A DNA stretch of 64,000 nucleotides from positions 124,001-188,000 of the IMG/VR virus record IMGVR_UViG_3300032116_000001; one strand, written 5' to 3'. Within the stretch, counting starts at the first letter, position 1. Each line of letters begins with the position of its first letter. Shown here one piece after another: positions 2,522-21,456 of the stretch. The notes beneath the pieces were generated by a model that had not been told where the DNA came from, did not search any database, and saw only the letters and a program-made list of their open reading frames with translations. The translations under genes were made by a program, and so were the position numbers.

Positions 2522-3382
2522 ATGAGCAAATTTCTTCGTAAAGTTTCTGATACAGAAAAGCTGCCTTCATCTGTGCAGCAGGCGTTTATTGGTGCGTCCT
2601 CAAATCAGGACGACCCATATGCACATTTGCGCATGGCCTCAAGAGACAATCAACTTAGTATAGCTAAGCAGTCTATGGGATATGATGAAGATGATGCTGA
2701 CATCGATGACCGATCCTGGGAGAGAGTTCAGGGCGCAAGCATTTACGAAGATAGACGCGCATCTAATATGACAGAAAGAATGAATAATCTTTCAATAGAA
2801 GATTTTTCTCCGCACGCCGTAAGGCGCTCGGATTATGGTATAGATGCAGGCGAGTCTTACAGAGAGACAACAAGCTCTCTTCAGGCATATACCCCTGAAG
2901 ATTATATGGCAGCTATGCTTAGGGGGGCTAGCATTTGGGACCCTGATATGGAAGTTATTGCTGATGCATTCCATAACAGTCAAGAAACTCAATCAGAACA
3001 GGTTATAGCCGAAGCTAAAATTCGCAGGGAAGCAAGACAAAACAGGCATCAGCAATGGGAAGAAGAAACCTCAAGTCATTTAGATTCTATTCGCCCATCA
3101 CGTGTTCTGTCGGCTCGCGCCGCACCTATATTACGAACAGCTGCTGAGAACGAAGCTGCAGGAAACTTTGGAATGATTGATTTTGATTCATTAGACAATC
3201 ATGAAGCACAACGGCTTGCCATGCAGGAAGAAAAACGTAATAGTCGGCTTGCCTTAAAACGCAATGGGATCAAGGATCGCGACGAAAGACATAATGACTG
3301 GCAAGAGCATGTTCAGACTCATGCAAGCACTATTCAAGATATTTATAATTATCAAAAGTACAACTTAAGCAGTGAGGATTAA
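2522..3382 (+). CDS. Hypothetical protein, probably head-associated
   Basis: 286-aa ORF co-oriented with the head module; no family recognised. Confidence 0.75.
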   Translation: MSKFLRKVSDTEKLPSSVQQAFIGASSNQDDPYAHLRMASRDNQLSIAKQSMGYDEDDADIDDRSWERVQGASIYEDRRASNMTERMNNLSIEDFSPHAVRRSDYGIDAGESYRETTSSLQAYTPEDYMAAMLRGASIWDPDMEVIADAFHNSQETQSEQVIAEAKIRREARQNRHQQWEEETSSHLDSIRPSRVLSARAAPILRTAAENEAAGNFGMIDFDSLDNHEAQRLAMQEEKRNSRLALKRNGIKDRDERHNDWQEHVQTHASTIQDIYNYQKYNLSSED

Positions 3383-3387
3383 TTTTT

Positions 3388-4374
3388 ATGAAAGGGCTTC
3401 GAACCGCGCAAGAGTTTGGTGGTGGGTTGGCCTCTAATCCCGCAAACGGAATAGCTAATATCCCACTCAATTCAACAGAGGATTCATCTGGTGTTAAGCC
3501 AGATGAATTACTTTCTATTTTGTCAAAGTTTATAAATTCTGATAGCGCAAGTGCTGTTCAATTTAAAGCAAAATTTGAAGATATTTTGCTTCGGTTAACT
3601 AGGCCAGATATGATAGATGCAATCCAAAAAATCATAAAAGCTATTGATATGGCTCAAGACCCTAAAAAAAGAACAAAAGACCCAAATACAGGCAAGTTTG
3701 ACCCAACAGCACAGGAACTTGCGCAAAAACTTTCCGACAAGGTGAAAATGATGGAAAAATCAAGCAGTAATCAAAATTCAAATGTTCTCAAATTTAATTT
3801 ACGAGAAGCCCAAGCCAAAAAGCCAAAGAAAAAAACAAGAGGCAACCCATTTAGGGTTTTAATGGGTAAAGTTGGCAAATTGCTTGACCATGGACTTGAA
3901 AAAAGTGAAATCAGAAGATATCTTGTTAAGCTGGGTATGTGGAATGAAGAAACAATTGAAAGAGCTATTGACATTGTTAGAGATTACAATAAAAAGAAAA
4001 GACGCGACGATGCCGATGGAAACAAAAAGGAATCTCAAATGTCTTCTGAATTAATGAGATTAGCAGAATCTAAGTTGGCATCAATGACTGATGAAGAATT
4101 TGATAATTTTTTAAATTCCAGAATTGCAGCCAAGGTTTTAGATAATTCAATCTATGATATTCCTGCTGATTTTTCAAAAAGATCAACAACGGAGTTAATG
4201 GCAAGGGCAACGTGGTTAATGTCGCTAATGAATTATAGTAAAGACATGCCACAAGGAGACGGCAAAAAACCTGCTGACACCAAGGGGGCGTCGGCAGAGC
4301 TGAAGTCAATTAAAAAGGCTCTGGAAGATCGTGGTTTTAATGCAGATGACTTGTCTGAAATGGGAATTAAGTAA
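3388..4374 (+). CDS. Hypothetical protein, probably head-associated
   Basis: 328-aa ORF, gagga SD upstream; basic segment KKPKKKTRGNPFRVLMGKVGKLLDHG. Confidence 0.75.
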   Translation: MKGLRTAQEFGGGLASNPANGIANIPLNSTEDSSGVKPDELLSILSKFINSDSASAVQFKAKFEDILLRLTRPDMIDAIQKIIKAIDMAQDPKKRTKDPNTGKFDPTAQELAQKLSDKVKMMEKSSSNQNSNVLKFNLREAQAKKPKKKTRGNPFRVLMGKVGKLLDHGLEKSEIRRYLVKLGMWNEETIERAIDIVRDYNKKKRRDDADGNKKESQMSSELMRLAESKLASMTDEEFDNFLNSRIAAKVLDNSIYDIPADFSKRSTTELMARATWLMSLMNYSKDMPQGDGKKPADTKGASAELKSIKKALEDRGFNADDLSEMGIK

Positions 4375-4397
4375 TTCGATTAAAGCGAATTGATTGG

Positions 4398-5957
4398 GTG
4401 AAAAAAATGTGTGAACATGTAAAAGAAGAAGAAACAAAATTTGAAGGCAAGCATGATCTTCAGATGGGTGGTGGGGGCTTGATTGAAATGATATTAAGCA
4501 CCATGGAGCAAATTAGCGAAGCTGTTAAATCAGCAGTTAAGGAAAATTCACACAATAAAGAATCTCCCATGGACTTAATCGAAGATTCAGACCTTGATGA
4601 TTCTGATCCCGTTGTTCAAGAGTTCTTTAATGACGGCGGGTGTAAAGGTGTATTAAAAATTATAAGATTAAACAAGCCCGAAGTTGCTCTTGAAAAGCTG
4701 TCTGAAATTTCAGTCAAGTTGCAAAAAGTTCGAATGGCAAATCGCCGTTTAATTTTAAGACAAATTTTTGCAGCAGCACAAATTGCGCGGGGAATTGATA
4801 ACGAAGCTGTAAATCTGGAGAGAGTCGCTCACAAAATGACTTCTCATAGCAAGGGATTTTATCAAGCAGAGTCTATTATGGCTATTGACAGCCTTGTTGC
4901 TGATACTTACAATCAGAGCGAGAAGCGCGTATTGGCTTCGGCCAGGGATTTAATTCTTTCTGGTGAATTCGAGAAAGGCGCACTGAAGCTAAAAGAAATT
5001 TATGCCTCAGCATTACCGCAATCACAAAATATCAGAACGGCTTACACAACGCTAAGAACCCAAGGTGGAGAGCCCTATTTGTTATGTCCAAAAGGCATTC
5101 ACGTAATGGGACATGCGGTGCCTATGGAAGTGAGCAAATGTAGAGAAAATTGCATTGATAGCAAGGTTGATGAAAGCGGGGCAGTATCATGCCAATATCA
5201 ATCTTGGCTCAAGCATGCTGATACTCACGAAAAAGCCATGGCAAGACTTGAAGTACATCGTCACCCAGATAATGCAGAAAACGCATTGGCGTATGATGAA
5301 GGTTCAAGAGGGCTACCATATAAGCTTAGTGATCTGCCTGTAGAGAAAAGATTTGAAGACAGCAATCAGGGATCAAATAAAGTGCGTGACAAAAAAGTAA
5401 GCGACGAAAGTATTGAGGCCAGACTGGAAAAAGCAAAATCTGGGCAGCCAGGACAGCGCCCAGGGCATTCTTCATCTATTTCAGATATGAACATAAAGGC
5501 ATCAAGTTTTAATAATAAAAGACATGCAATTGCTCAGAATGTGGGCATTAAATCAATGGAACAACAGCTGCGATCAGAATCCTCTGCAGAGCCTGCAAAT
5601 ATTACAATTGAAAAGCAGCTAGAAACAACAAATGGGTATAATGGCCACAGGGGCGAAATGGAACAAAGTTATGCCCACCAACTGGCCAATCAAGAATCCA
5701 ATTCAGAATCAATAACTGAACAGCTTTTGGACCAAGAAGAAATTGGTGGGGTGCGGGTCACAGAAAGACTTGCGTCAGATGTCGCAGAAATCAATCCAGA
5801 GTCTAAAGATACTTTAGGTAGCCAAATTTCTGAAGATCACACAAATGAACAATTGGATGATTTCACAATTGAAGAACTTCTTGCTGATGAAAGACGTGGG
5901 TTGTCGGAAGACGAAATCGATATGCTTTTAGAGCAATTGCTTGAAGAAACAAGATAG
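4398..5957 (+). CDS. Hypothetical head-module protein with Cys-rich domain and C-terminal T-x-E-x-x-L repeats
   Basis: 519-aa ORF; LCPKG..CRENC..SCQY cluster; repeats such as TIEKQLETT and TIEELLADERRG. Confidence 0.75.
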   Translation: MKKMCEHVKEEETKFEGKHDLQMGGGGLIEMILSTMEQISEAVKSAVKENSHNKESPMDLIEDSDLDDSDPVVQEFFNDGGCKGVLKIIRLNKPEVALEKLSEISVKLQKVRMANRRLILRQIFAAAQIARGIDNEAVNLERVAHKMTSHSKGFYQAESIMAIDSLVADTYNQSEKRVLASARDLILSGEFEKGALKLKEIYASALPQSQNIRTAYTTLRTQGGEPYLLCPKGIHVMGHAVPMEVSKCRENCIDSKVDESGAVSCQYQSWLKHADTHEKAMARLEVHRHPDNAENALAYDEGSRGLPYKLSDLPVEKRFEDSNQGSNKVRDKKVSDESIEARLEKAKSGQPGQRPGHSSSISDMNIKASSFNNKRHAIAQNVGIKSMEQQLRSESSAEPANITIEKQLETTNGYNGHRGEMEQSYAHQLANQESNSESITEQLLDQEEIGGVRVTERLASDVAEINPESKDTLGSQISEDHTNEQLDDFTIEELLADERRGLSEDEIDMLLEQLLEETR

Positions 5958-5976
5958 TGCAAAAGGTGTGTGCAAG

Positions 5977-6417
5977 GTGTGGTATCGACTTTCGCAAAAA
6001 ACTTTAGGTATTGGCGGCGGGGCATTAAAGTCCTCGCCGTCAAATGATTCTGTATTGCCAGCAGAACAACATGCCAAAATGTGGGATGTATTGGTTAATC
6101 AAACAGATCATATCGGAAACAGAAAGGGCGAGCCAAATGAAACCACTGGTGATCAAGGTGCCATAAACGAGGGGCAAGCAACTCAAGGCACAGAAATGAG
6201 AAGAGTTTCGCCTTATCATAGCAATCCTGAACACACAACTCTTGAAGAGCAACTTGAAACCGCAAGGCAACAAAACGTAAATAACGATCCGATAGCAATG
6301 ACGCAAAACAATTTCGGAACTGGAGAAATGCTAATAAGAGGAGTGCCCCAGTATAGTTCTGGCAAAGGGTGGGTAGGCTTTCAAGGAAATAACCCGTCTG
6401 CGATAACCCTGGTTTAA
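5977..6417 (+). CDS. Hypothetical protein beginning MWYRLSQ (start re-assigned from 5941 to GTG 5977)
   Basis: GTG at 5977 follows aaaggtg, removes the overlap with the upstream gene and gives the shared N-terminal tag. Confidence 0.7.
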   Translation: MWYRLSQKTLGIGGGALKSSPSNDSVLPAEQHAKMWDVLVNQTDHIGNRKGEPNETTGDQGAINEGQATQGTEMRRVSPYHSNPEHTTLEEQLETARQQNVNNDPIAMTQNNFGTGEMLIRGVPQYSSGKGWVGFQGNNPSAITLV

Positions 6418-6438
6418 AGGTTTTTTTCTTTTATGCAG

Positions 6439-6472
6439 ACAATATCTTAAGGAAAGAGTCTTAAGATATTGT
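6439..6472. promoter_or_regulatory. 13-bp perfect inverted repeat directly followed by TATAAT, upstream of the portal
   Basis: acaatatcttaag / gaaagagt / cttaagatattgt, overlapping the start of tataat; could be a terminator or an operator. Confidence 0.4.
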
Positions 6473-6538
6473 ATAATTGTGCAATATGTCTTTAAAGACA
6501 TAAGTGAGGTTTTGCTTTTGGCCAATCAAGAATCAATA

Positions 6539-8941
6539 ATGGAAGCCCCAACATTAGCCAGTGTTATGAGGGTTGCCGCGCAAACTGTGTCTGGCGAGAG
6601 AGTGATCGGTGCAACAACAAAAAGAGACACAGGCCAGCAACATGTTGCGTCAAGAATTACGTCTGGGATCGGAGCCAGCGTACACAAAGGCGTGCGGGAA
6701 GCGCAGGTTTCACCCAACAGCATTACTACGGCACCCAACTTTTATAGCCCGTTTTTAACACCAAGGGCTTATCAAGTTCCAAACGCACGCAAAGAAGTGT
6801 ATCTTTGGGCAAACTGGTGGCGAAATAATGAACCAAAAGTTGCCGCGGCTATAAATTTTTACAAACTTTTTCCTTTTTCTGGATGGAAACTTGAATGTTC
6901 AAGTTCATATGTCAAAGACTATTTTGAGAAATTAATCCAAAAGCTTAATTTCCAAAAATGGCTTCCAGAAATCAGTGGCGTATATCATCTTTTTGGAGAC
7001 TGCTTTGTACTTGCAACTCTTGAGTGCGAACACTGTGAGGGAAGCATGATTGATAAAAACACGGGAGAAGCCTGCAGCCATGATGGGGCAACATGGGCCA
7101 GCCTGACTATTTTAAACCCCGACAGTATTCAGATTAGGCCTGGTATATCTGGTCAGGAAAATTCATATTTTTATCAACCAACCGAAAGAGACATTCGATT
7201 AATCAATGAACGTCAATCACAACAATTCTATCATCAAATACCAGATAATGTAAAGAGACTTATCAAAAAGGGAGAGCCATTCCTTCTTAATTCCATATGC
7301 ATAGAGCACTTTAAATTTGGCTCTAGCCCTTGGGAAGATTACGGAACGCCAATGATTAGGTCGCTCTTTCCGACACTGGCTTATAAAGATAAATTAAGAA
7401 ATGCTCAATGGCTTATTGCTGAACGACATATTCTTCCCGTTAAAGTTGTAAAAGTTGGATCAGACAACAGGCCAGCAAGCCAATCTGATATTGATAGCGT
7501 GCAAGAAGAATTGGCCGCTGTTGCAAATGACCCCAATTTGACTTTAGTCACTCATAATGCATTCGATTTTGATTATGTGGGAGCATCAGGAAAAGTTCTG
7601 CAGCTTACAAATGAATTTGAGCTTATAGATCAAGAGATTCTTGATGGCGTAATGCTAAATAAGGCACTATTAAATGGTGAAGGCCCAACATATGGAAATG
7701 CCCAGGTTGGCCTCTTGGCAATGAAACAGCGCTTAGAAACATTCCGAAATGAAGTTGCAAGATGGATTGAAGAAAAATTATTTAAACCAGTCGCAGAATG
7801 GAACGGCTTTGTCATTGAGGGCGAAAGAGGACAAGATGAATTAGTTTATCCCAAAATTGTTTTTAGTGATTTAGAGCTTAAGGACAAAACTGGGATTTTG
7901 CAAATGTTTGTCACTGCTAATAGCAATGGTGTTATTTCAAATCAGTCATTAATTGAAGAATTTGGCCTTAATCCAGACCAAGAAATTGAAAGACTCCGTG
8001 AGGAGCAGGGCGCTAACTTTGTGCAAAACCCAGCAATAGGAAACACAGACCTTGGTAATGGTTTTGCAGGCGGCATGGGTGGAGGATTCGGCGGGATGGC
8101 CCCATCAATGCCTGCGCCAGGCGGAATGCCAGCGGCTCCTGGTATTGATGGTATGGGTGGAATGCCGCCTATTGGAGCAAGAGATTACCGAGAAAATTAT
8201 CGCCTGGCATCTGGTATAATGAACGACATTTATCGTGAAAAAATTGGCATTCATACTGCAGAAATTCAGACGAGAACAGCATCAAAAACAATTAAGTCTC
8301 AGGCTCATTACGAATTTTTAAGCACAATAAAACCTGTTTCTGGTCGGGGATTGGCTGGGGAACTTCCAGAGGAATATGATGGCTTTGGCAATGTCCTAGA
8401 GCCACAGTTGTTAGGAGGACCATTCTGTTTTCCTCTTAATTCATCGGCAATTCATGAGCTAAGAAACATAATCGCAGAAGCCTCTAATGATCCTGCAGGC
8501 AAAATTGCTTTAGCCTCGGCTGAAGAAGCAAAAAATAGAATAACCATTGGCAAGAAGGGTGGCAGAAATGAAGAGAAACAAGTTAATTTGTTCACAAGCA
8601 TTGAGAAGAAACTTTACTATCTTTTGACATCTTTAAACTTACCTTTTGCGATTTATGCTCAATATAGTATGGGGCAAACAAGTGATTACACCCTGGATGC
8701 CGCAATACCATCGTTGAGGCTAGGCTTTGAGGCAGATGGTGAAATTTGGCACAATAGTCCAGATAAAATTGCAAGAGATAAAAGAAGAGATATGGAGCTA
8801 GCAGCAAATGGCTGGACAATTCTTCGCTTTACAGACAAAGAGTTAAATGATCGCCAAAACGAAGTTGCCCAGGTAATTTTACAAGCTATCCGAAAAGTTG
8901 CAGCACCAGGTCAAGATAATCAAGGGAATATCATTCTCTAG
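6539..8941 (+). CDS. Portal protein with C-terminal DUF559/Vsr-like endonuclease domain (ORF open from GTG 6479; ATG 6539 preferred)
   Basis: Portal-like core (EPKVAAAINFYKLFPFSGWKL, GTPMIRSLFPTLAYKDKLR, ILPVKVVKVG), position before the protease, C-terminal YTLDAAIP..FEADGEIWH..RD..L..NGWTILRF. Confidence 0.85.
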   Translation: MEAPTLASVMRVAAQTVSGERVIGATTKRDTGQQHVASRITSGIGASVHKGVREAQVSPNSITTAPNFYSPFLTPRAYQVPNARKEVYLWANWWRNNEPKVAAAINFYKLFPFSGWKLECSSSYVKDYFEKLIQKLNFQKWLPEISGVYHLFGDCFVLATLECEHCEGSMIDKNTGEACSHDGATWASLTILNPDSIQIRPGISGQENSYFYQPTERDIRLINERQSQQFYHQIPDNVKRLIKKGEPFLLNSICIEHFKFGSSPWEDYGTPMIRSLFPTLAYKDKLRNAQWLIAERHILPVKVVKVGSDNRPASQSDIDSVQEELAAVANDPNLTLVTHNAFDFDYVGASGKVLQLTNEFELIDQEILDGVMLNKALLNGEGPTYGNAQVGLLAMKQRLETFRNEVARWIEEKLFKPVAEWNGFVIEGERGQDELVYPKIVFSDLELKDKTGILQMFVTANSNGVISNQSLIEEFGLNPDQEIERLREEQGANFVQNPAIGNTDLGNGFAGGMGGGFGGMAPSMPAPGGMPAAPGIDGMGGMPPIGARDYRENYRLASGIMNDIYREKIGIHTAEIQTRTASKTIKSQAHYEFLSTIKPVSGRGLAGELPEEYDGFGNVLEPQLLGGPFCFPLNSSAIHELRNIIAEASNDPAGKIALASAEEAKNRITIGKKGGRNEEKQVNLFTSIEKKLYYLLTSLNLPFAIYAQYSMGQTSDYTLDAAIPSLRLGFEADGEIWHNSPDKIARDKRRDMELAANGWTILRFTDKELNDRQNEVAQVILQAIRKVAAPGQDNQGNIIL

Positions 8942-8990
8942 TGTTGAGTAATTTTTAGCATATTTTCTGTTATTTTTTTGAAAATGTTAC

Positions 8991-9015
8991 AGGTGCAAGC
9001 CTGAAAATAACAGAA
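8991..9015 (+). promoter_or_regulatory. AGG-N19-GAA late-promoter-like motif, first of a tandem pair before the protease
   Basis: AGG tgcaagcctgaaaataaca GAA. Confidence 0.65.
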
Positions 9016-9040
9016 AGGCATATAAAGCGTTGGTTTTGAA
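9016..9040 (+). promoter_or_regulatory. AGG-N19-GAA motif, second of the tandem pair
   Basis: AGG catataaagcgttggtttt GAA, directly abutting the first copy. Confidence 0.65.
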
Positions 9041-9086
9041 AGTTTTCAAAAAATCAACATAACTAATTTTAGGAGAAAGAATCACC

Positions 9087-12000
9087 TTGATGGAGCGGCG
9101 AGCCAAGTGCGGCATCATAAATATTCATAGCTTTCTCAACGAGGAAGATCGCAATGCGGCTCGTGATCACATGATGCGAACTGCTTCTGTTCAATTAAGA
9201 GAAGCAGCTAAAATTGGTTTGCAGTCTTTATATGCTGATCCAGAAGAAGTTTTAAAGAAATACAAAGACTTTGACATAGTTAAAGCAATGCAGGCAAGAA
9301 AAGGTGCCAAGCTTCTGTGGGTCAGGGCCAGGGCGATTGACGCTGATACAGTAAATGCCAATGGCGATTATTTCTCAAGGGCCGAGTTACTTAAGGAAGT
9401 TGAAGTTAAGGGCGAAAAGATACCTGCGTATAAAACATTTGAAGGTGTCCCGATTTATACAAATCACAAAAACGATGACATCGAGCAGGCAAAGGGTATG
9501 GTCGTTTATGCAGAATGGGACGAGGAACAAAATTGTGTATTCTGTACATTCTTCGTTGACGAAGAAGCGTACCCTGATATAGCAAGAAATATTCGAACTG
9601 GTGTAATCCATGATGTTTCTATGGGCTGTCAGGTGCAAAGTGGCGAGTGCTCTAAATGCGGCAATATAGCCACTATTGAAAAAGAATATTGTGATTGTCT
9701 CAAGAAATACAAAGGCAAAAAACACCCTGTAACAGGTGAAAAAATTTATGAAAAAAACTTTGGATTAAAGTTTATTGAATTAAGTTGTGTTGGTGACGGG
9801 GCATTTGAAACCTGCGAAATAGAAGAGCTTTATGACGTTGATGAAATTCTTGATGCTGCTATGAGCACAGAAAGACGTGCAAATTCTATTTATTCAAGCA
9901 TAGTTCTTGCCAGCACATTAATGCCAGACAACACTGTTGATAAGCATTATTTTGAGGAATCTTTAAGAGAAATTTCTGCCGCTGCTCAATCTGCAGTACG
10001 ATTAGCCCAATCTGCAGGCACCCTGGTTGGTGGGCAGTTGATGGCAGGCGAGGGCGCGGACCAAAATGCAACAGTTTCGGCAGTATTAAACGCTCTGGGA
10101 ATTGATCCAAGGTCAGGGTTAAATATTCTTGATTTACTTAATCTTGCCTTAAACTTTTTAGAAGTTGCGGTTATGAATCTTTTTGCAAGAAAAGATAATG
10201 TTGACTTGACTCATGTTGGAAAAATTACAAAAAGCATGGCCGATCTTCAAAACACCATGCAAGACATGATTGATGATGGCGTAGATACTGGTGTAAGAAA
10301 TCAACAGCCAATTAATCAAGGTCAAATTGCAAATCAGCCACCAATGGCAGCTCCACAAATGCCCCAGGGTGGTCAACAAATTAATCCTGGCGCTGGGCAG
10401 CAACCCATGAATTGGAATAACTTGGGAGATGTTGGAAGATCAATAAGCCCAATGTCTATGCCTGGGGGAATTGGTGGTGGCGTTGTGCTTTCATCTTCTG
10501 ATCCACAAATGATAATGTGGGCGTCAAAGGATGGAAGTCGCGAAGTTTACGCCAGCGTAAAAGCTTCGCAAAACAATCAATCTAGTAGATTGACAAACAA
10601 TATAGTAGAATTTGGACAAGCTCTTGTTGGCTTTAAAAATTCGCTTGGCATAGACCAAAAATCAATTGCCAATTTTAACAAAAACAATCAATTCGTGCGT
10701 GCTGCCCAAGGGCGCAACACAAATCAAAAGACCAACGCGCCTGTTACTGCAGGGGCGGGAGAATACCAAACTATGGATCATTTCGCAAAAATCGCTCAAG
10801 AGCAGCGCAAGAAATACGCTTTTACCGCCCATGTAGATGTTACTATGGAGGATGCCAGCGGCAACCGCGTTGTTCTTTCAACTGACGGAAATATTTCTGG
10901 ATTTGTCAAGGGTGTTAAAGCCCAGTGGGAGCCAGAACTTACTGAATCTCAAATCGCTCGCATGGAAAATGGCGAGGGCACAAGAGTTGCATCTGAGTTG
11001 CTTGCAAGTTTTGCAAAGCAAGTTAAAACAGCTGGATGGAAGCCTTATACCGAAACAGATGTCAAGGAAAACGAACTTGAGCCACATCGCAACGGGACAA
11101 AGATTGAAACAAGAGAAGAATCTTTGGAAAAAATGAGGTCCAACAACAAGGGTGAAAAAACCATGCAAGAAGCACTTGGTGGTGATTATTACTCCAATAG
11201 AAGAGACGCCGACGACGATGTTAAAGAAAACATGCTTGATGAAAGCGCAGGACTTTACGGCAGGGCCGTAAATGAGTCATTTAATGAAGTAAAGGATCGC
11301 TTGCTTGAAGATGCACGGCGTGGACATCCCGAAAATACACTTGAAGAACAACTTTCTGAGTGCAGAGAAAATCATGGAACCGCAGAAGTTGAAGTGGTAA
11401 TGACAATGGTGAAAGAAGCAATGGCCAAGGCCGTTGTTGCTTCAAGAGTTTTGCCAGAAGAAATTGTTTCCGTGGCTGAAACGCTGGCTTCGCGCAATGA
11501 TCTGGAAGAACTCGTTGCTCTTGCAAGCTTGGGTATGAATACCAGAAAGGCTTATGCTAATCGAAGAGCATTCCATAAAATTTCTGCTGTATTAATGGCA
11601 CCTGATGCTGCTCTGTTGCATTCGCTTGGTGAGATTGTGAGCCGTGAAATAACTGCATCTGATGTAAGTGAGGCAATTCGAGTTGCTGCATCTATGAAAG
11701 ACGTGGCAACTACTGCTGTCGCAAACATGGTTGAAGCCATGAGAGACGGCGAAATGGTTGAGGCAGCGCCTGTAAACATTAAGGTTAGCAGAGAAGAAAG
11801 ACTCAAAACAGCTCTTGCCTCTTCTGGGCACGAATCATTTAATAAAGAGCACTTAAAGGCTGTTATTTCAGCAATGGTGATGGCAAGTGAAGAAACACAA
11901 GCTACACCCGAAGAGGTTGTTGATTCACTCAAGGGACTTAATTTGGCCTCAAAAATCAACGAAGCCCGAACAGCTTCGGCGACGGATGGAAGATTGACTG

Positions 12001-13367
12001 CAAGAGCAAGAAAACAATTCTGGGGTAATGAAAGATTCGCATCTAAGTCAACGGTCTCTGATGCAACTGTTGGATGGATTGCTGATTACGCAACCAACTT
12101 TGATTACAGTACGCAGGCGGTGGCTCAGGCTGTGGAAAAACTTACCAATGATCCCAGGGTGGCAACGCACTTGATTACTAAGGCCATTGATGCCAAGCTC
12201 CAAGGCGAAAGAATGGCAGGTGTTACGGTTACAGAAGAAAAGTCAGAAATCATTCGCTTTGTGTGCAGGGCAGAAGACCTCGGAGGTATTGACCCCAAGG
12301 ACGAAGCTTTTGAAGACACTTTTAGACAAAAGGCTATTGAAATTCTAACCGCTCAAGGATTTACAGTTGATCCAGGAACATTTAGCTTTACTGATCTTTC
12401 AGTAACAGAAAACGGGGACATTACTGCGTCGGTTCAAACCAGAGTCACAAAGACTTTTAAAGCAGACGCCGAATTACCTGCTCAGCCCCTGGAAAATATG
12501 GACACAATGTCCGTGGCCCCAGAAGTTATTGAGCCAACAGTAGTAATGTCTGAAGCAGCAAGAGAAGCCAGACTTGCAAGGCGGCAGCAAATTTTAAGCA
12601 AGATTGCACAAGCCGCCCCTGGCATGATGCCACCAGCTCAAGAGATGGGCACGCCAGGCATGGATGCTTCGGGTATGGGAATGGCAGGCGCTGAAGGTCT
12701 TGGCGTTGCCGCCTTGTCGGTGCCGACGGCAGCGGGTGACAATCCTGTTGAAGAACCCGCTGATACTGATGCAATGCCAGAACCTGGCAATCCAAAGCCA
12801 ATTGGTACTATCTGCCCCATATGTGGCAGCGATGATGTTGATCTTGCTAACAGCGAGGGTGAGTGCAACTCGTGTGGCACGCGCTATAAAGTTATGCAAA
12901 GTATTGAAATCATTAGCATTGGTGGTGGTGAGCCCGTTAATAATGATTCGCCTGAGGCAGAAATGGATGGCATGGCGTCACCCGATACCATGGGTCTTGG
13001 AGAGGACACTGGTCTGGGCGCTGCCACTGCGCCCGCTCCTATGGGTTCACCCGACATGAACAACCCAGGAGGCATGCCGCCTGCTCAAGGAATGGGAGCC
13101 ATGGCCAGCGCAGGCGCAGCTTTGTATCGAATTGCTGCCACAGTTGACTCTGATGTGTATCTCAAAACAACTATGCCAAACTTTAGCCGAACTGCTGAAA
13201 AGCAATTGCCCATCGGCATGGTATGTCCAAAGTGCGGCAGCAGAGAGGCTCAAAAAGTCAAGAACTCTACGTTCTGTTATGATTGTGGAAACTATGCTAT
13301 TAGCAGCGTGAAGCCAAATGATTCTGATCCCACAAAGATCGATGTTTCAATAACCTGGTTGGCATAA
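9087..13367 (+). CDS. Prohead (capsid maturation) serine protease with long scaffold-like C-terminal region and zinc ribbons
   Basis: NANGDYF, PIYTNH (His), DVSMGC (Ser), FIELSCV motifs of HK97/assemblin-fold prohead proteases; CSKC, CPIC..CNSC, CPKC..CYDC; located between portal and capsid. Confidence 0.85.
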   Translation: MMERRAKCGIINIHSFLNEEDRNAARDHMMRTASVQLREAAKIGLQSLYADPEEVLKKYKDFDIVKAMQARKGAKLLWVRARAIDADTVNANGDYFSRAELLKEVEVKGEKIPAYKTFEGVPIYTNHKNDDIEQAKGMVVYAEWDEEQNCVFCTFFVDEEAYPDIARNIRTGVIHDVSMGCQVQSGECSKCGNIATIEKEYCDCLKKYKGKKHPVTGEKIYEKNFGLKFIELSCVGDGAFETCEIEELYDVDEILDAAMSTERRANSIYSSIVLASTLMPDNTVDKHYFEESLREISAAAQSAVRLAQSAGTLVGGQLMAGEGADQNATVSAVLNALGIDPRSGLNILDLLNLALNFLEVAVMNLFARKDNVDLTHVGKITKSMADLQNTMQDMIDDGVDTGVRNQQPINQGQIANQPPMAAPQMPQGGQQINPGAGQQPMNWNNLGDVGRSISPMSMPGGIGGGVVLSSSDPQMIMWASKDGSREVYASVKASQNNQSSRLTNNIVEFGQALVGFKNSLGIDQKSIANFNKNNQFVRAAQGRNTNQKTNAPVTAGAGEYQTMDHFAKIAQEQRKKYAFTAHVDVTMEDASGNRVVLSTDGNISGFVKGVKAQWEPELTESQIARMENGEGTRVASELLASFAKQVKTAGWKPYTETDVKENELEPHRNGTKIETREESLEKMRSNNKGEKTMQEALGGDYYSNRRDADDDVKENMLDESAGLYGRAVNESFNEVKDRLLEDARRGHPENTLEEQLSECRENHGTAEVEVVMTMVKEAMAKAVVASRVLPEEIVSVAETLASRNDLEELVALASLGMNTRKAYANRRAFHKISAVLMAPDAALLHSLGEIVSREITASDVSEAIRVAASMKDVATTAVANMVEAMRDGEMVEAAPVNIKVSREERLKTALASSGHESFNKEHLKAVISAMVMASEETQATPEEVVDSLKGLNLASKINEARTASATDGRLTARARKQFWGNERFASKSTVSDATVGWIADYATNFDYSTQAVAQAVEKLTNDPRVATHLITKAIDAKLQGERMAGVTVTEEKSEIIRFVCRAEDLGGIDPKDEAFEDTFRQKAIEILTAQGFTVDPGTFSFTDLSVTENGDITASVQTRVTKTFKADAELPAQPLENMDTMSVAPEVIEPTVVMSEAAREARLARRQQILSKIAQAAPGMMPPAQEMGTPGMDASGMGMAGAEGLGVAALSVPTAAGDNPVEEPADTDAMPEPGNPKPIGTICPICGSDDVDLANSEGECNSCGTRYKVMQSIEIISIGGGEPVNNDSPEAEMDGMASPDTMGLGEDTGLGAATAPAPMGSPDMNNPGGMPPAQGMGAMASAGAALYRIAATVDSDVYLKTTMPNFSRTAEKQLPIGMVCPKCGSREAQKVKNSTFCYDCGNYAISSVKPNDSDPTKIDVSITWLA

Positions 13368-13382
13368 TTAAGCAAGAGTAGG

Positions 13383-13433
13383 AAACAAAACGAGACATGA
13401 TTGGTTAAATTCTAATCATGTCTCGTTTTGTTT
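13383..13433 (+). terminator. Rho-independent terminator-like hairpin
   Basis: 20-bp perfect stem aaacaaaacgagacatgatt / aatcatgtctcgttttgttt ending in a T-run. Confidence 0.7.
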
Positions 13434-13488
13434 TTTCATTTATTATTCCTTTTTATTGAATAATAAATGAAAAAAAATATTTTTTTGC

Positions 13489-13513
13489 AGGTGTTAAAGC
13501 TATTTTTAGTGAA
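13489..13513 (+). promoter_or_regulatory. AGG-N19-GAA motif before the scaffold-decoration-capsid genes
   Basis: AGG tgttaaagctatttttagt GAA. Confidence 0.65.
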
Positions 13514-13568
13514 GTCTTTAAGCAGACACTCACTTGTTAATGCAAAACATAATCAAGTGAGGAGCCTA

Positions 13569-15305
13569 ATGGCTCTTAAACAGAGGGAAGCAGCAATTAT
13601 GAATAAGAATAACGAAACTCCCCTCCAGACTGATAGACTGAAACAAGTTCTTAGAATCGCAGAAATCAAAGCTACGGATAAAGAAGATATGGAAAATTGT
13701 GTAAACGACATGCAAAGAAGTGCTTCGCTTGATGAAAGTGAAGCACGCATTGTCGCCAAGGCCGTTAGGGCAAAGCATCTTCCTAATATTCTCCGTGAAG
13801 CGGGTGCTGAAGAAATGATTAAAGAGGATTTGTTAACGCCAGTTGGAGTGGCCTCGGAAACTGCTGACTTCGCTAAAGATAAAAATGACGACGATCACGA
13901 TGAAGATAATTCAGAATTTGTTGAAAACGAAGATTTTGATTTATTGAATTCTGAAGAAGATTTAAACGACGATATGGGCGAAGCAAACGACGAAACAAAC
14001 ATCGCCACTTTTGAAATCGACGTTCCCGCAGACAAGGTTGAGGAAGCGCAGAAAGCTGTGCAAGAAGCTCTTGACAAGATTTTTAGCGGAGACGCATCTG
14101 ACGATGAGTTAGATGAAGAAGACCATGACACAGCACTTGAAGGCCTTGCCGACGAAGACGTTGAGGAAGTGGATGATCTTGAAGGTGACATGGACATTGA
14201 TATGTCCACTGACGTAGAGGAGGCCGATGATGCCCCCTTGCAGCACACAGCAAGCACGGTGAATAAAATTATGACCCCAGAAGAAAGAACCAAGCGCCAA
14301 GCAGAGCGCGAAGCTATTCTCCAGCGCGTGGTCGTTGCTGAGGAAGCATCCAAGCCAAAAGACAGAGGTCTTGGCAAGGATACAACTGAAGGCACTTATG
14401 GTGGACAAAAGGCAAAGCCTTTCCAGCATAATGATGCCGCGCAATACCACGGCGAAGAAGCCTTCCCAACAATGTCCCTTAAGGGCGGTGAAGGTAATTC
14501 CCAGCGCGGAGACAATCCTAACTATGCCGATCAACCAATCCCGACTATGAATCCCGAAAACCTTCAGTTGAAGGGTGCCGTGGATGCGGTGAAGCTGGAC
14601 GGTCAGCCTGACGGAACTATCGAATATGTAATTGATTTCAATCATCTTGATGATGTTCCATCTGCGGAGCCTGAACGTGGCACCGCGTTTGAAATTCCAA
14701 CGCAAATGGAAAATCTTCCTCGCAAGACAACCGTTGCTTCTCAAAATGACACTGAGGAAAGACTGGCTGAAGTTGAAGATGTTGTTTACAATTACCTCGT
14801 TGAGGCTGGTGTAGACGGCGAAGAAGTTGGTAAAATGACAGTTGCCGAAGGTGTGAATCTTCTTATGAAGATTGCATCTGAAAAGAGTAAGGACACCGAG
14901 GCAAACGACCTTAACGTTGAAATCAATGCAGAAGATGCAAAAGATGAGCGCAAGGCCGCGATTCAAGAATCACGGATCAAAACTGCTTACTCTTGCGCAT
15001 TTAAGCTTGCTTTGAACAATGTCCTCGCACAAAATGAAGTTGATGGATACGCTGAAACTATGCTGAACGACAGGTTACCTGTTGACAGCATGATCAGACA
15101 AACAACGCTTCTGATGCGCTCTGCTAACAGTAGCGCTCAACGTGTCGCTCAGGCAGCCGCTGAGAACTTTGGCACTGCTCGCTCGGCTTCAAGCCAAGCC
15201 GTTTCGTCATCCCCTGCACTTTCTGGTGATTTTAACACCAATAGTGCTTCGACAGATATACAAGAGGCTCTTAGAGGTGTGTTTACCATGCCCCGTGAGA
15301 ACTAA
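13569..15305 (+). CDS. Putative capsid scaffolding/assembly protein (start 13569 or 13599; ORF open from 13467)
   Basis: Very acidic, helical protein immediately before decoration and capsid genes; gaggag SD before ATG 13569; the 13467 start lies upstream of the promoter motif. Confidence 0.65.
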   Translation: MALKQREAAIMNKNNETPLQTDRLKQVLRIAEIKATDKEDMENCVNDMQRSASLDESEARIVAKAVRAKHLPNILREAGAEEMIKEDLLTPVGVASETADFAKDKNDDDHDEDNSEFVENEDFDLLNSEEDLNDDMGEANDETNIATFEIDVPADKVEEAQKAVQEALDKIFSGDASDDELDEEDHDTALEGLADEDVEEVDDLEGDMDIDMSTDVEEADDAPLQHTASTVNKIMTPEERTKRQAEREAILQRVVVAEEASKPKDRGLGKDTTEGTYGGQKAKPFQHNDAAQYHGEEAFPTMSLKGGEGNSQRGDNPNYADQPIPTMNPENLQLKGAVDAVKLDGQPDGTIEYVIDFNHLDDVPSAEPERGTAFEIPTQMENLPRKTTVASQNDTEERLAEVEDVVYNYLVEAGVDGEEVGKMTVAEGVNLLMKIASEKSKDTEANDLNVEINAEDAKDERKAAIQESRIKTAYSCAFKLALNNVLAQNEVDGYAETMLNDRLPVDSMIRQTTLLMRSANSSAQRVAQAAAENFGTARSASSQAVSSSPALSGDFNTNSASTDIQEALRGVFTMPREN

Positions 15306-15985: not shown

Positions 15986-16840
15986 ATGAGCATGATCAAG
16001 AGAAATACAAACGAGCAGCGCGAAGCCATTATTGCAATGGCTATGGAAACCCCCGAGGGTAGAACTGCGCTTGCACAAGCGATGGTTGAGCCAATCAAAA
16101 CATCGTTGATGTACCAAGCCATCGGGCGAAAGCTTCTGATGGTTGACGAGCTGCCAAACGGCGCTCTGGCCCGATACGAGCGCGACGTAGCTGTTAAGAG
16201 CTACGTGATTCCGAAGCGTGGTTCCGTGCCCGACGCCCTCGTGGAAGCTGAAGAGCTGATCGTTCCTACGATTGAGCTTGCTGCCCACCCCACGATCAGA
16301 CTGAACGAAATCCGCGCCCGCCGATTCTACATCGTGGACCGCGCACAAGTTCGTGCCAAGGACTCGCTCCAGCGACAGGAAGACGTTGAAGTCTTTAAGG
16401 TCATCAACGCTGCAATCCCAACTGACCACAGCATCTCCGTTTCAGGTACCCTGCAGGCTGAAAACATCAACCTGGCCCTTACCCTGATCGAAGAGCACGA
16501 ACTGATCGGTGCCAAGATTGTTCTCGCTCCACAGCGATACAAGGACATTCGGGGCTGGGGCAAGGAAGTGTACGATGAGGCAACTCAGCGCGACATCCTG
16601 ATGACTGGTCTGTACGGCCACATCTACAGTGCTGACATTCACGTTAGCACCATGGTTCCTAAGAACGCGGTCTACGTGCTTGCACCTGCCCAGTTCGTTG
16701 GTGCCATGCCAGTGAAGCAAGACATCACTGTTCTGCCCGCAGACGATCCTAAGCGACTCCGCCTCGGCTGGGTGGTCTATGAAGAAATCGGCTTTGCTGT
16801 CATCAATGATTACGCTTTGAGCCGCGTGACTGTTGCTTAA
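15986..16840 (+). CDS. Major capsid protein, HK97 fold, short form without a delta domain
   Basis: 284 aa; E-loop and P-domain-like pattern (RKLLMVDELPNGALARYERD, IVDRAQVRAKDSLQRQED, GWVVYEEIGFAV); aaggag SD; strongest codon bias in the window; followed by a terminator. Confidence 0.88.
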   Translation: MSMIKRNTNEQREAIIAMAMETPEGRTALAQAMVEPIKTSLMYQAIGRKLLMVDELPNGALARYERDVAVKSYVIPKRGSVPDALVEAEELIVPTIELAAHPTIRLNEIRARRFYIVDRAQVRAKDSLQRQEDVEVFKVINAAIPTDHSISVSGTLQAENINLALTLIEEHELIGAKIVLAPQRYKDIRGWGKEVYDEATQRDILMTGLYGHIYSADIHVSTMVPKNAVYVLAPAQFVGAMPVKQDITVLPADDPKRLRLGWVVYEEIGFAVINDYALSRVTVA

Positions 16841-20286: not shown

Positions 20287-21456
20287 ATGCTCAGGGCATA
20301 CAAGTATCGAATCTATCCTAACAAGGAGCAAGCCGAAATGTTCGTTGAACATTTCGGCGCTTGTCGGTTCGTATACAATTGGGGACTGCAACTCAAGACG
20401 GAAACGTATCAACAGGCGTCGAAGACGCTTTCTTACTACGACTTGAACAATCTGCTTCCGAAGCTAAAAACAGAGCATGTTTGGTTGAAGAATGTTAATT
20501 CTCAATCTATTCAGTCTGCTTTGAAGAATCTGGAAAGTGCATATACCAAGTTCTTCCGAGAAAAGAAGGGATTCCCAAAGTTCAAATCAAAACACAATCC
20601 GAAACAGTCTTTCCAGTGTCCTCAGCATTGTTCTGTGAATTGGGAGAGCGGAACACTCTCCATACCAAAAATTAAAGGAATCAAGGCGAAGTTTCATCGC
20701 AAGTTTGATGGAGAGATTAAGACTGTCACTGTCAGCAGGAATGCTGTCGGACATTTCTATGTCTCAATCCTTGTTGAAAACAGTCAACCTCTGCCACCGA
20801 AGGCAGCTCTAAGTGCTGATGATGCCGTAGGCATCGACGTAGGATTGTCAAGATTTCTTACAGCATCAGACGGAATGATTGTCGCGAATCCGAAGTTCCT
20901 TCGGAAGTCTGAGAAGAGACTTGCATATGAGCAATATCGACTTAGTAAGATGAAGAAAGACTCTGCAAGCAGAGCAAAACAAAAGAAACGAATTGCTCGT
21001 ATTCACGAGCATATATCCAATCAAAGACGAGACTTCCTGCACAAAGTGACGAGCAGACTTGTTGGCGAGAGCCAAGCAACAACGTTCTGTGTCGAAGACC
21101 TTTCAGTTAAGAACATGCAGAAGAATCGTTGTCTTGCAAAATCCATCGCTGATGTATCTTGGGGAATGTTCTTTGACTTTCTCAAGTACAAGTGCGAATG
21201 GACAGGAAAGAATCTTCTCGACATCGGAAGATTCGAGCCAAGCTCCAAGATGTGCAGCGCTTGCGGTGCTGTGAATAAAGAACTAAAGCTATCTAACAGA
21301 GAATGGCTTTGCTCCTGCGGAGCCAAGCATGATAGAGATGTCAATGCTGCTGAGAACATCAAAAGAATGGCATTTCAGAAGCAAAACTTAATTAGATGTA
21401 TAGGGCTGGAACAGCCCGAATCAACGCCTTTGGACACTGTAGCGATAGATACGTGA
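20287..21456 (+). CDS. tnpB: TnpB RNA-guided endonuclease
   Basis: RAYKYRIYP HTH start, RuvC motifs GIDVG, VEDL, DRDVNAA, zinc finger CSACG..CSCG. Confidence 0.95.
   Translation: MLRAYKYRIYPNKEQAEMFVEHFGACRFVYNWGLQLKTETYQQASKTLSYYDLNNLLPKLKTEHVWLKNVNSQSIQSALKNLESAYTKFFREKKGFPKFKSKHNPKQSFQCPQHCSVNWESGTLSIPKIKGIKAKFHRKFDGEIKTVTVSRNAVGHFYVSILVENSQPLPPKAALSADDAVGIDVGLSRFLTASDGMIVANPKFLRKSEKRLAYEQYRLSKMKKDSASRAKQKKRIARIHEHISNQRRDFLHKVTSRLVGESQATTFCVEDLSVKNMQKNRCLAKSIADVSWGMFFDFLKYKCEWTGKNLLDIGRFEPSSKMCSACGAVNKELKLSNREWLCSCGAKHDRDVNAAENIKRMAFQKQNLIRCIGLEQPESTPLDTVAIDT

What the first reader, a model, noticed from the sequence alone, without database searches (positions are those of the whole stretch)
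8080..8941. Portal protein fused to a DUF559/Vsr-like endonuclease domain
Seen: after the portal core and a G/M/P-rich linker, the ORF continues without a stop into a PD-(D/E)xK-type domain that retains the D, E and H residues (TLDAAIP, FEADG, WH, RD, GWTILRF). No intein signatures flank it, and RLAS and RTAS motifs lie in the intervening region. Established: packaging nuclease activity normally resides in the large terminase, not the portal. Inference: a dodecameric portal carrying nuclease domains inside the head, or a domain released by the protease, acting in packaging-end trimming, ejection or as injected cargo.
Basis: partly seen in the sequence, partly recalled or inferred. Interest (0 to 1): 0.65.

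Follow-up and report, generated by a model that had tools for sequence, protein, structure and literature searches.

The report
Portal protein with built-in nuclease
A 379-kb freshwater phage, and a whole clade of uncultivated relatives, make a head portal protein that ends in an intact-looking Vsr-type DNA-cutting domain, so each virion probably carries twelve copies of a nuclease at its DNA gate; I found no description of this arrangement in the literature I could search.

Summary
One 820-codon ORF (window 6479-8941) holds four parts:
- a portal core (residues ~74-520);
- a 50-residue G/P/A/M-rich linker;
- a ~130-residue helical region with no known family;
- a DUF559/Vsr-like nuclease (residues ~701-809).

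The join is not an artefact. Contigs from independent freshwater runs cover it without indels. Of 148 representative relatives, 116 carry the nuclease. The rest are mostly truncated fragments or portals of 35% identity or less.

The nuclease is nearly as conserved as the portal core. It diverges in step with the core (Spearman 0.87). E709, D740, E751, H758 and D767 are invariant. In at least seven relatives an intein sits exactly inside its E|xDG motif.

The phage's large terminase appears to keep its own nuclease region, so the portal domain is an extra activity rather than a replacement.

Best reading: the portal's C-terminus, which faces the capsid interior in solved portals, loads twelve nuclease modules into the head. 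They are possibly freed at R-x-A-S sites, a motif 9-fold enriched in this phage's head proteins. Substrate, timing and processing are untested. I found no paper describing the fusion. I rate it a new variant of a known kind, of moderately high interest.

The parts
6479..8941 (+). Whole portal-nuclease ORF (820 codons from GTG 6479; probable true start ATG 6539, giving 800 aa; stop at 8939-8941)
6698..8038 (+). Portal core, residues ~74-520 (wing, stem and crown helices)
   Evidence: Pfam Portal_Mu and PHROG portal families. 29.6% identity to Bacillus phage G portal gp14 over residues 62-517. The full-length model matches solved portals at Foldseek probability 1.00, E 5e-9, although that model is of low confidence.
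8039..8188 (+). G/P/A/M-rich low-complexity linker, residues 521-570
   Evidence: Composition. Disordered in both models. Variable in length and only 34% mean pairwise identity.
8189..8578 (+). Helical middle region, residues 571-700. It has a long first helix (570-599) and the conserved motifs NYRLAS and PV(S/T)GRG..LPE.YDG. No known family.
   Evidence: No Pfam, NCBIfam or Atlas match.
8201..8212 (+). R-L-A-S (residues 575-578), candidate processing site
   Evidence: Inference only.
8273..8284 (+). R-T-A-S (residues 599-602), candidate processing site. The split relative L003 ends its portal ORF directly after the aligned R-V-A.
   Evidence: Inference only.
8579..8905 (+). DUF559 / Vsr-like (EDxHD-type) nuclease domain, residues 701-809. 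Catalytic candidates: E709 (8603-8605), D740 (8696-8698), E751 and D753 (8729-8737), H758 (8750-8752), D767 (8777-8779).
   Evidence: Pfam. PDB sequence matches 3hrl and 3r3p. AF2 model pLDDT 79.5, pTM 0.79. VIA-align Z 9.1 (3hrl), 8.6 (3r3p), 7.5 (Vsr 1cw0). Residue invariance.
9087..13367 (+). Next gene: 1426-aa protein with a head-maturation protease domain at residues ~87-242, followed by a long scaffold-like tail with G/M/P-rich linkers and paired CxxC motifs
   Evidence: phrog_18299 E 9.8e-17; sequence
15986..16840 (+). Major head protein, which places the portal in a head-assembly module
   Evidence: phrog_2522 E 6.7e-66

Best explanation
The gene encodes a true portal protein. Its C-terminus, which faces the capsid interior in all solved portals, has been extended by a flexible linker, a helical adaptor region and a catalytically competent Vsr/EDxHD-type endonuclease.

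The portal ring has twelve subunits and nucleates head assembly. The fusion therefore acts as a loading device that puts twelve nuclease modules into every head, next to the inner mouth of the DNA channel.

The most likely sequel is that the head-maturation protease, encoded by the next gene, cuts the extension at R-x-A-S sites just after the linker. The module then becomes a free internal head protein that meets DNA at the portal and leaves with the genome at infection. There it would nick or cut DNA of the host, of a competitor, or the incoming genome's own ends.

Shown:
- the architecture;
- its conservation across the clade;
- intact catalytic residues;
- co-divergence of the nuclease with the portal core;
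- a separate large terminase gene whose C-terminal part matches terminase families.

Inferred:
- the location inside the capsid;
- proteolytic release;
- ejection;
- the substrate.
For: - One ORF, with the junction confirmed in independent runs.
- 116 of 148 representatives (50% clusters) that match the portal core carry the nuclease. The others are mostly truncated fragments, two apparent frameshift or short variants, or portals of 35% identity or less.
- Mean pairwise identity is 0.46 for the nuclease and 0.51 for the core, against 0.34 for the linker and 0.24 for the middle region. Core and nuclease pairwise identities correlate at Spearman 0.87.
- E709, D740, E751, H758 and D767 are invariant, and D753 is kept in 36 of 37 sequences. 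They map onto Vsr E25/D51/H69/D97 and I-Bth0305I E170/D196/H213/D222.
- The fold matches 3hrl (Z 9.1, rmsd 1.8), 3r3p (Z 8.6) and Vsr (Z 7.5).
- Class-1-type inteins (C...HN|C) sit between the E and the xDG of the nuclease motif in seven relatives. This marks the motif as a long-conserved site.
- R-x-A-S occurs 13 times in 5,134 aa of head-module proteins against 29 times in the other 107,808 aa of the proteome. Leaving the portal out, the count is 10 against 1.16 expected (p 4e-7). The motif is also enriched in the head modules of relatives L002 and L003, but not in outgroups L008 and L010.
- Two such sites lie between the linker and the nuclease. A natural split variant ends its portal ORF right after the second one.
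[quoted passage not shown] The MuF protein SPP1 Gp7 binds the portal (PMC5576092).
Against: - There is no protein-level evidence of any kind: no virion mass spectrometry, no structure, no assay.
- The R-x-A-S motif was suggested by the portal itself. One copy (RPAS, residues 331-334) lies in the conserved core, where cleavage would be harmful. The serine of the first site is not conserved.
- A DNase sealed in with the genome needs some restraint, and none was found. There was no small immunity-like gene, and ThyA-like, TGT and N6/N4-methylase families gave no hit in the genome.
- A single invariant domain over a deep clade looks more like a core morphogenetic enzyme than like injected weaponry.
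Confidence: 0.45

Rival explanations
1. The nuclease stays covalently tethered to the portal crown and works inside the head during packaging. As a nickase at the inner mouth of the channel, it would introduce single-strand interruptions or relieve torsional strain in a very long genome. Alternatively it would cut DNA that should not be there. It would then be a second DNA-cutting activity of the packaging machine, independent of the terminase.
For: - The fusion itself, and its near-universal retention across the clade.
- The long flexible linker, variable in length but always present, suits a tether with reach.
- Vsr-family enzymes are single-active-site nickases (PMC3239194).
- An invariant domain over a deep clade fits a core morphogenetic role.
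- T4 gp4 is a virion-associated REase-fold nuclease required for morphogenesis, as cited in PMC7824862.
Against: - The L003 lineage encodes the nuclease as a separate polypeptide and keeps its catalytic residues.
- The R-x-A-S enrichment hints at processing.
- Nothing here shows nicks in the packaged genome.
Confidence: 0.25
2. The domain is a homing endonuclease of the EDxHD family that fused to the 3' end of the portal gene. It persists as a selfish or interference element, cutting portal alleles or competitor phages in co-infection.
For: - The closest solved relatives include the I-Bth0305I catalytic domain.
- PHROG homing-endonuclease families match weakly.
- This portal gene is a hot spot for mobile elements: inteins occupy at least five sites in relatives.
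Against: - The distribution is not sporadic. Every full-length representative of 39% identity or more among the 150 best has the domain, in the same place.
- It co-diverges with the core.
- No empty sites are left to home into.
- No NUMOD or HTH DNA-binding region was detected.
- An intein is itself inserted in its active-site motif.
Confidence: 0.1
3. The domain no longer cuts DNA. It serves as a DNA-binding or structural plug, for example holding a genome end at the portal or forming an inner-core-like body.
For: - Vsr-fold domains that bind nucleic acid without clear nuclease activity exist. FASTKD4 RAP-type modules appear among the fold matches (Z 6.6; PMC11879112, listed).
- The middle region and the nuclease are modelled as one compact unit (pTM 0.79).
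Against: All five catalytic-motif residues are invariant over 37-40 sequences spanning 37-79% core identity. That is not expected for a purely structural role.
Confidence: 0.1
4. The join is an assembly or sequencing artefact, and the nuclease is really a separate downstream gene.
For: Two relatives show portal and nuclease as adjacent ORFs (L003; L011).
Against: - In both relatives the second ORF continues the fused frame after a frameshift. In L011 the shift lies inside the G/P-rich linker on a single MAG contig.
- More than 100 representative clusters and hundreds of 90% clusters have the fused ORF.
- Independent runs cover the junction without indels.
Confidence: 0.01

Closest known systems
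MuF (SPP1 gp7 / Mu gpF) polymorphic toxins of temperate phages (PMC5576092)
   Same: A head protein associated with the portal carries a C-terminal enzymatic domain, most often a nuclease. The gene lies in the portal/packaging module. The presumed logic is that virion incorporation delivers an enzyme.
   Different: Here the carrier is the portal itself, giving twelve copies rather than the one or two reported for SPP1 Gp7. No MuF domain is detected. The domain is a single invariant family over a deep clade, not polymorphic. No immunity gene is evident. The phages are huge (about 380-420 kb) and uncultivated, and their lifestyle is unknown.
I-Bth0305I and the EDxHD homing endonucleases (PDB 3r3p; PMC3239194)
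   Same: Vsr-like catalytic fold (Z 8.6, TM by target about 0.8) and the full E-D-x-H-D residue set, encoded in phages.
   Different: No NUMOD or HTH DNA-binding region. Not inside an intron or intein. Fixed and co-diverging with its host gene rather than sporadic.
E. coli Vsr mismatch endonuclease (PDB 1vsr, 1cw0) and bacterial DUF559 proteins (PDB 3hrl)
   Same: Fold and catalytic residues. Even the N-terminal IEK.L..LL helix motif is shared with Vsr (recalled from memory of the Vsr sequence). 3hrl is the best structural match (Z 9.1, 93 of 94 residues aligned).
   Different: The domain contains no cysteine at all. It therefore cannot hold a Vsr-type zinc site; Vsr's zinc-binding motif is described in PMC3239194. 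The Vsr subfamily model scores 23.5 bits against a cut-off of 97.85. The context is a virion structural protein, not a repair enzyme.
T4 gp4 head-completion nuclease, and the recruitment of T4 endonuclease VII to portal gp20
   Same: A nuclease of the restriction-endonuclease fold that is virion- or portal-associated and works alongside the terminase. gp4 is cited in PMC7824862. The endonuclease VII-gp20 association is recalled from memory (Golz and Kemper, 1999).
   Different: Those are separate polypeptides acting on the outer, neck side of the portal or in the cytoplasm. Here the nuclease is covalently joined to the end of the portal that faces the capsid interior.
Portal proteins of other very large phages, for example Bacillus phage G gp14
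   Same: Homologous portal core (29.6% identity over residues 62-517), in a portal-protease-capsid gene module.
   Different: Phage G gp14 (648 aa) and metagenomic portals of 35% identity or less have short, unrelated tails, and the three outgroup loci examined have no DUF559 gene within 6 kb.

Membership tests
Phage portal protein (Portal_Mu, PF06074; portal fold) | Sequence match above the family threshold | tested here: met
   35.3 bits against a cut-off of 23.9. PHROG portal E 1.6e-32.
Phage portal protein (Portal_Mu, PF06074; portal fold) | Portal fold (wing, stem helices, crown) | tested here: met
   The full-length AF2 model is poor overall (pLDDT 57.5). Foldseek nevertheless returns only portals at the top (probability 1.00, E 5e-9 to 1e-5).
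Phage portal protein (Portal_Mu, PF06074; portal fold) | Position in a head-assembly module | tested here: met
   Followed by the maturation protease and the major head protein. A large terminase gene lies about 12 kb upstream.
Phage portal protein (Portal_Mu, PF06074; portal fold) | Dodecameric ring at one capsid vertex | not testable with these tools
   Needs cryo-EM or biochemistry.
DUF559 / Vsr-like PD-(D/E)xK nucleases (PF04480) | Sequence match above the family threshold | tested here: met
   37.1-42 bits against a cut-off of 20.6. NCBIfam DUF559 model E 6.8e-9, below its equivalog cut-off.
DUF559 / Vsr-like PD-(D/E)xK nucleases (PF04480) | Vsr-like fold | tested here: met
   3hrl Z 9.1 with rmsd 1.8 A over 93 residues; 3r3p Z 8.6; 1cw0 Z 7.5.
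DUF559 / Vsr-like PD-(D/E)xK nucleases (PF04480) | Catalytic E, D, H, D residues present and conserved | tested here: met
   E709, D740, H758 and D767 are invariant in 37-40 relatives. Mapping is by the alignments and by PMC3239194.
DUF559 / Vsr-like PD-(D/E)xK nucleases (PF04480) | Nuclease activity | not testable with these tools
   Needs an enzyme assay.
Vsr mismatch-repair endonuclease proper (TIGR00632) | Subfamily score and structural zinc site | tested here: not met
   23.5 bits against a cut-off of 97.85. There is no cysteine in residues 701-820.
EDxHD homing endonucleases (I-Bth0305I type) | EDxHD catalytic domain | tested here: met
EDxHD homing endonucleases (I-Bth0305I type) | N-terminal NUMOD/HTH DNA-binding region | tested here: not met
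   No such Pfam or NCBIfam hit in residues 560-700. Atlas look-alikes are uninformative.
EDxHD homing endonucleases (I-Bth0305I type) | Residence in an intron or intein, or a sporadic mobile distribution | tested here: not met
   Fixed at the portal C-terminus in 116 representatives, and co-diverging with the core.
MuF polymorphic toxins | MuF (PF04233/PF06152) domain upstream of the toxin domain | tested here: not met
   No MuF hit in P0001 at E <= 1.
MuF polymorphic toxins | Variable C-terminal domains with an adjacent immunity gene | tested here: not met
   A single invariant domain family. The next gene is the protease, after a 145-nt spacer.
Intein | Hint splicing blocks flanking the inserted domain, with a C-extein following | tested here: not met
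   No Hint or intein hit in this gene. The domain is terminal.

The most novel reading that the evidence does not exclude
The portal of these huge freshwater phages is itself an enzyme. A ring of twelve tethered Vsr-type nickases at the inner mouth of the channel would act on the genome as it is threaded in or out. It might write site-specific nicks, relieve the twist that builds up while packaging nearly 400 kb, or destroy foreign DNA that enters the head. This would be a second DNA-cutting activity of the packaging machine, independent of the terminase.
Probability: 0.15. Interest if true: 0.85.

Novelty: new variant of a known kind. Interest (0 to 1): 0.68.

Why it matters
Portals are regarded as passive DNA gates and sensors. 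The only DNA-cutting part of the packaging machine is taken to be the large terminase. A deep, abundant clade of huge freshwater phages adds a strictly conserved nuclease to the portal, at the end that faces the capsid interior. This implies a step in head maturation, genome conditioning or early infection that model phages lack or perform with separate proteins.

It also gives a defined and easily testable handle on uncultivated giant phages: a ~25-kDa module with five candidate catalytic residues and two candidate cleavage sites.

Public pipelines currently annotate these portals as 'very-short-patch-repair endonuclease'. That hides the portal gene in hundreds of assemblies.

The intein inside the nuclease motif, and up to five or six inteins per portal gene, make this locus a notable case of intein accumulation.

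Tried and rejected
**Artefact.** Rejected.

**P0122 as a stand-alone 420-aa nuclease gene.** It is only a late start call. The ORF is 738 aa and fused.

**L011, portal 522 aa plus a 260-aa DUF559 gene.** This is a frameshift inside the G/P-rich linker on a single MAG contig, possibly an error.

**Stand-alone close relatives of the C-terminal module.** The word search with residues 560-820 found mostly short proteins on short contigs, consistent with fragments of fused genes, plus the L003 variant. The search only sees proteins of 143-457 aa that share exact words, so distant free-standing kin are not excluded.

**Portal nuclease as a replacement for a missing terminase nuclease.**
- Pfam Terminase_6N, Terminase_6C and TerL_ATPase, and phage G TerL as a query, all found nothing in the genome.
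- PHROGs then identified a 1074-aa TerL at genome 114897-118121.
- Most of its PHROG matches fall on an intein in its P-loop.
- The C-extein still matches TerL families at residues 916-989 and shows HLDPA..SD and KDDICDA motifs, read by eye.
- It gave no PDB sequence hit. 'Retains its nuclease' is therefore likely, not proven.

**Middle region (residues 571-700).** No Pfam, NCBIfam, PHROG or Atlas family.

**Similarity between the C-terminal tails of this portal and phage G gp14.** None.

**DNA-modification genes that could protect the phage's own DNA.** ThyA-like, TGT/DpdA and N6/N4 methylase families gave no hit. This was not an exhaustive search.

**Raw reads of run X21.** None were laid; only 3% of the run was read.

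**RNA evidence.** No RNA run holds the stretch.

**Full-length monomer fold.** Low confidence. It was used only to confirm the portal fold and the disordered linker.

**Literature.** Searches for portal with DUF559, Vsr, endonuclease domain or intein found no description of this fusion. One search was a mistyped query.

Full report
**What is in the sequence**

The window is bases 124001-188000 of a 378,848-bp virus record that CheckV rates as complete. Between 6479 and 8941 on the + strand lies one uninterrupted ORF of 820 codons. Relatives begin at the residue aligned to M21, so the true start is probably the ATG at 6539.

- Pfam places Portal_Mu on residues 240-497, and DUF559 together with the related MTES_1575 on residues 706-804. 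Portal_Mu and DUF559 are both above their curated cut-offs.
- A PHROG portal family covers residues 74-447 at E 1.6e-32.
- Between the two domains lie a 50-residue linker (17 G, 7 P, 6 A, 6 M) and about 130 residues that match no family.
- This gene contains no intein.
- The gene sits in a head module. The next gene is a 1426-aa protein with a head-maturation protease domain, and the major head protein follows.

**Is the join real?**

Yes. The phage occurs in freshwater metagenomes from 12 studies. Contigs from two studies other than the likely source cover the linker and the junction with only three base substitutions, all in the 5' part, and no insertions or deletions.

A word-indexed search of 5.8 billion proteins returned 553 relatives. 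The best 120 are almost all 760-820 aa long and carry both the portal and the DUF559 Pfam domains, at identities down to 49%.

An exhaustive HMMER search of 1.84 billion representatives gave 295 hits at E <= 1e-30. I cut the query into core, middle and nuclease parts and re-scanned the 148 listed relatives.
- 116 contain the nuclease.
- The other 32 are mostly truncated inside or right after the core, or are portals of 30-35% identity and 500-730 aa.
- Three such outgroup loci have no DUF559 gene within 6 kb of the portal.
- Bacillus phage G gp14 is the nearest isolate (29.6% identity in the core). It has an unrelated 130-residue tail.

The nuclease module therefore appears to be a shared derived feature of one large uncultivated clade.

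Two exceptions exist.
- In L003 the portal ORF stops after ...N-T-R-V-A, and a second ORF in the -1 frame continues with TGRALLGPLPE... and an intact nuclease. About 18 residues of the middle region are deleted. The short protein is found on three contigs.
- In L011 the frame slips inside the G/P-rich linker on a single MAG contig, which may be an error.
- P0122, which looked like a separate 420-aa gene, is only a late start call.

**Is the domain a working nuclease?**

Everything that can be computed says it could be.
- A profile of 40 C-terminal regions hits the DUF559 structure 3hrl (E 2.7e-5) and the catalytic domain of the homing endonuclease I-Bth0305I, 3r3p (E 1.4e-4).
- An AlphaFold2 model of residues 560-820 is confident (mean pLDDT 79.5, pTM 0.79).
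- The model superposes on 3hrl (Z 9.1, rmsd 1.8 A, 93 of 94 residues), 3r3p (Z 8.6) and Vsr bound to DNA (Z 7.5).
- The published I-Bth0305I/Vsr correspondence (PMC3239194) and the alignments give the catalytic set. It is E709 (Vsr E25), D740 (Vsr D51), E751 (the extra acidic residue of the EDxHD family), D753 (Vsr H64 position), H758 (Vsr H69) and D767 (Vsr D97).
- E709, D740, E751, H758 and D767 are invariant in 37-40 relatives, and D753 is kept in 36 of 37.
- The domain has no cysteine, so it lacks the Vsr zinc site. It also fails the Vsr subfamily cut-off. It is a Vsr-like nuclease, not Vsr.

**Selection and history**

Mean pairwise identity is 0.51 for the portal core, 0.46 for the nuclease, 0.34 for the linker and 0.24 for the middle region. 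Core and nuclease pairwise identities correlate at Spearman 0.87. The pairs are not independent, so this shows co-divergence rather than giving a meaningful p-value.

Many relatives are 1,100-3,000 aa long because inteins (Pfam Intein_splicing, Hint, LAGLIDADG_3) interrupt the portal at recurrent positions near query residues 111, 131, 186, 370 and 405.

In seven representatives an intein sits inside the nuclease motif itself...G-V-E | C-L-H-P-(D/E)...S-H-N | C-D-G-x-x-W-H. It thus lies between E751 and the next residue, which has become the +1 cysteine. Inteins typically lodge in the most conserved sites of proteins. This marks the ExDG motif as such a site, and it is hard to reconcile with the domain being a decaying selfish element.

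**Does it replace the terminase nuclease?**

Probably not. Pfam terminase models and phage G TerL found nothing in the genome. PHROGs then identified a 1074-aa large terminase at genome 114897-118121.

Its P-loop (GRRSGK|S) is split by a LAGLIDADG intein. That intein accounts for most of the PHROG hits. The C-extein still matches terminase families at residues 916-989. It also shows the acidic motifs usual for the terminase RNase-H-like nuclease (HLDPA..SD and KDDICDA), which I read by eye. There was no match to a solved structure by sequence.

**How it most likely works**

In the solved portals the C-terminal crown faces the capsid interior. This is established structural knowledge. The fold of this protein matches those portals, and its crown helices end at about residue 516, just before the disordered linker. 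The extension should therefore hang inside the head in twelve copies. Fusion to the portal is then a way to load a fixed dose of enzyme at the DNA gate.

Whether the module stays tethered is open.
- R-x-A-S occurs 13 times in the 5,134 residues of the eleven head-module ORFs, against 29 times in the remaining 107,808 residues of the proteome. That is 9.4-fold (p 3e-9).
- Leaving out the portal, from which the idea came, the count is 10 against 1.16 expected (p 4e-7).
- The same enrichment is seen in the head modules of two relatives of the fused clade (5 against 0.85, and 7 against 1.16). Two outgroup modules do not show it (1 against 0.63, and 0 against 0.72). Part of the signal in relatives comes from homologous positions.
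- Sequence motifs enriched in head proteins are how the cleavage sites of T4- and phiKZ-type prohead proteases present themselves (my own knowledge).

So R-x-A-S is a reasonable candidate for the cleavage site of the protease encoded next door. Two copies lie just after the linker (residues 575-578 and 599-602). The L003 split variant ends its portal exactly after the second R-x-A.

I therefore favour loading by fusion followed by proteolytic release of a ~25-kDa nuclease module. The module would then behave as an internal head or ejection protein. The permanent-tether, nickase-in-the-head reading is the main rival.

I cannot say what DNA it cuts. I found no immunity-like gene, and ThyA-like, TGT and N6/N4-methylase families gave no hit. 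How the packaged genome would be spared is unexplained.

**Comparison with what is known**

- The nearest concept is the MuF polymorphic toxins. [quoted passage not shown] Here the carrier is the portal itself, no MuF domain is present, and the domain is invariant rather than polymorphic.
- T4 gp4 is a virion-associated REase-fold nuclease needed for morphogenesis (cited in PMC7824862). It is a separate neck-side protein.
- I-Bth0305I shares the fold and the catalytic residues. It is an intron-borne, sporadically distributed enzyme with NUMOD DNA-binding repeats, and none of those features holds here.
- The ESM Atlas has automatic clusters named 'DUF559/Portal protein of Mu bacteriophage domain-containing protein' (104 and 52 members, viral). 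JGI pipelines label these portals 'very-short-patch-repair endonuclease'. The architecture therefore exists in databases but is uninterpreted.
- Full-text searches found no paper describing it.

**Verdict**

The fusion is ancient within its clade, under purifying selection and catalytically intact by every sequence and fold criterion. It is best classed as a new variant of known kinds (portal proteins, and virion-delivered nucleases). Its mechanism is only partly inferable. Interest 0.68.

Noticed in passing
relatives P0161-P0285 (for example P0205, P0253, P0267, P0270); query positions ~111, ~131, ~186, ~370, ~405 and 751/752: Orthologous portal genes are intein hot spots. There are recurrent insertions at five or more fixed sites, up to 5-6 matched stretches per protein, and lengths up to 3,003 aa. 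Seven representatives have an intein between the E and the xDG of the nuclease motif. The window's own portal has none.
   Followed up: partly
outside the window: genome 114897-118121 (L007:6897-10121): The large terminase (1074 aa) has a LAGLIDADG-bearing intein inserted in its Walker A loop (GRRSGK | C-less 'ALALDT...THN' | S). Standard Pfam terminase models miss the protein entirely.
   Followed up: partly
window 2522-15305 (head-module ORFs): The tetrapeptide R-x-A-S is 9.4-fold enriched in head-module proteins relative to the rest of the proteome. The 286-aa product of 2522-3382 has three copies. It is a candidate prohead-protease site.
   Followed up: partly
window 9087-13367: A 1426-aa protein joins a head-maturation protease domain (residues ~87-242) to a very long tail. 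The tail has G/M/P/Q-rich linkers like the portal's and two pairs of CxxC...CxxC zinc-ribbon-like motifs near the C-terminus. It is conserved in relatives (about 1400 aa in L002 and L003).
   Followed up: no
L003:4175-6468 (ENA ERZ19570027 and two further contigs): A natural split variant. The portal ORF ends at ...T-R-V-A, an ~18-residue stretch of the middle region is deleted, and the nuclease module continues in the -1 frame as a 155-162-aa ORF with its catalytic residues kept.
   Followed up: partly
window 17044-18378 and 20287-21456: A free-standing LAGLIDADG endonuclease ORF (444 aa) lies just downstream of the major head protein gene. A transposase (phrog_506, E 1.7e-127) lies a little further on. 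Both are mobile elements inside the structural module.
   Followed up: no
window 6441-6478 and 8960-9060: A perfect palindrome (AATATCTTAAG...CTTAAGATATT) followed by TGTATAAT lies directly upstream of the portal ORF. Two hairpin-forming inverted repeats lie in the 145-nt spacer before the protease gene. These are possible promoter or terminator elements.
   Followed up: no
window 59320-61488: A 722-aa protein has an N-terminal tRNA nucleotidyltransferase (CCA-adding) domain (phrog_2244, E 1.9e-68).
   Followed up: no
database records of relatives: JGI/IMG automatic annotation names these portals 'very-short-patch-repair endonuclease' after the small C-terminal domain. The portal gene is therefore effectively mislabelled in many assemblies.
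   Followed up: yes
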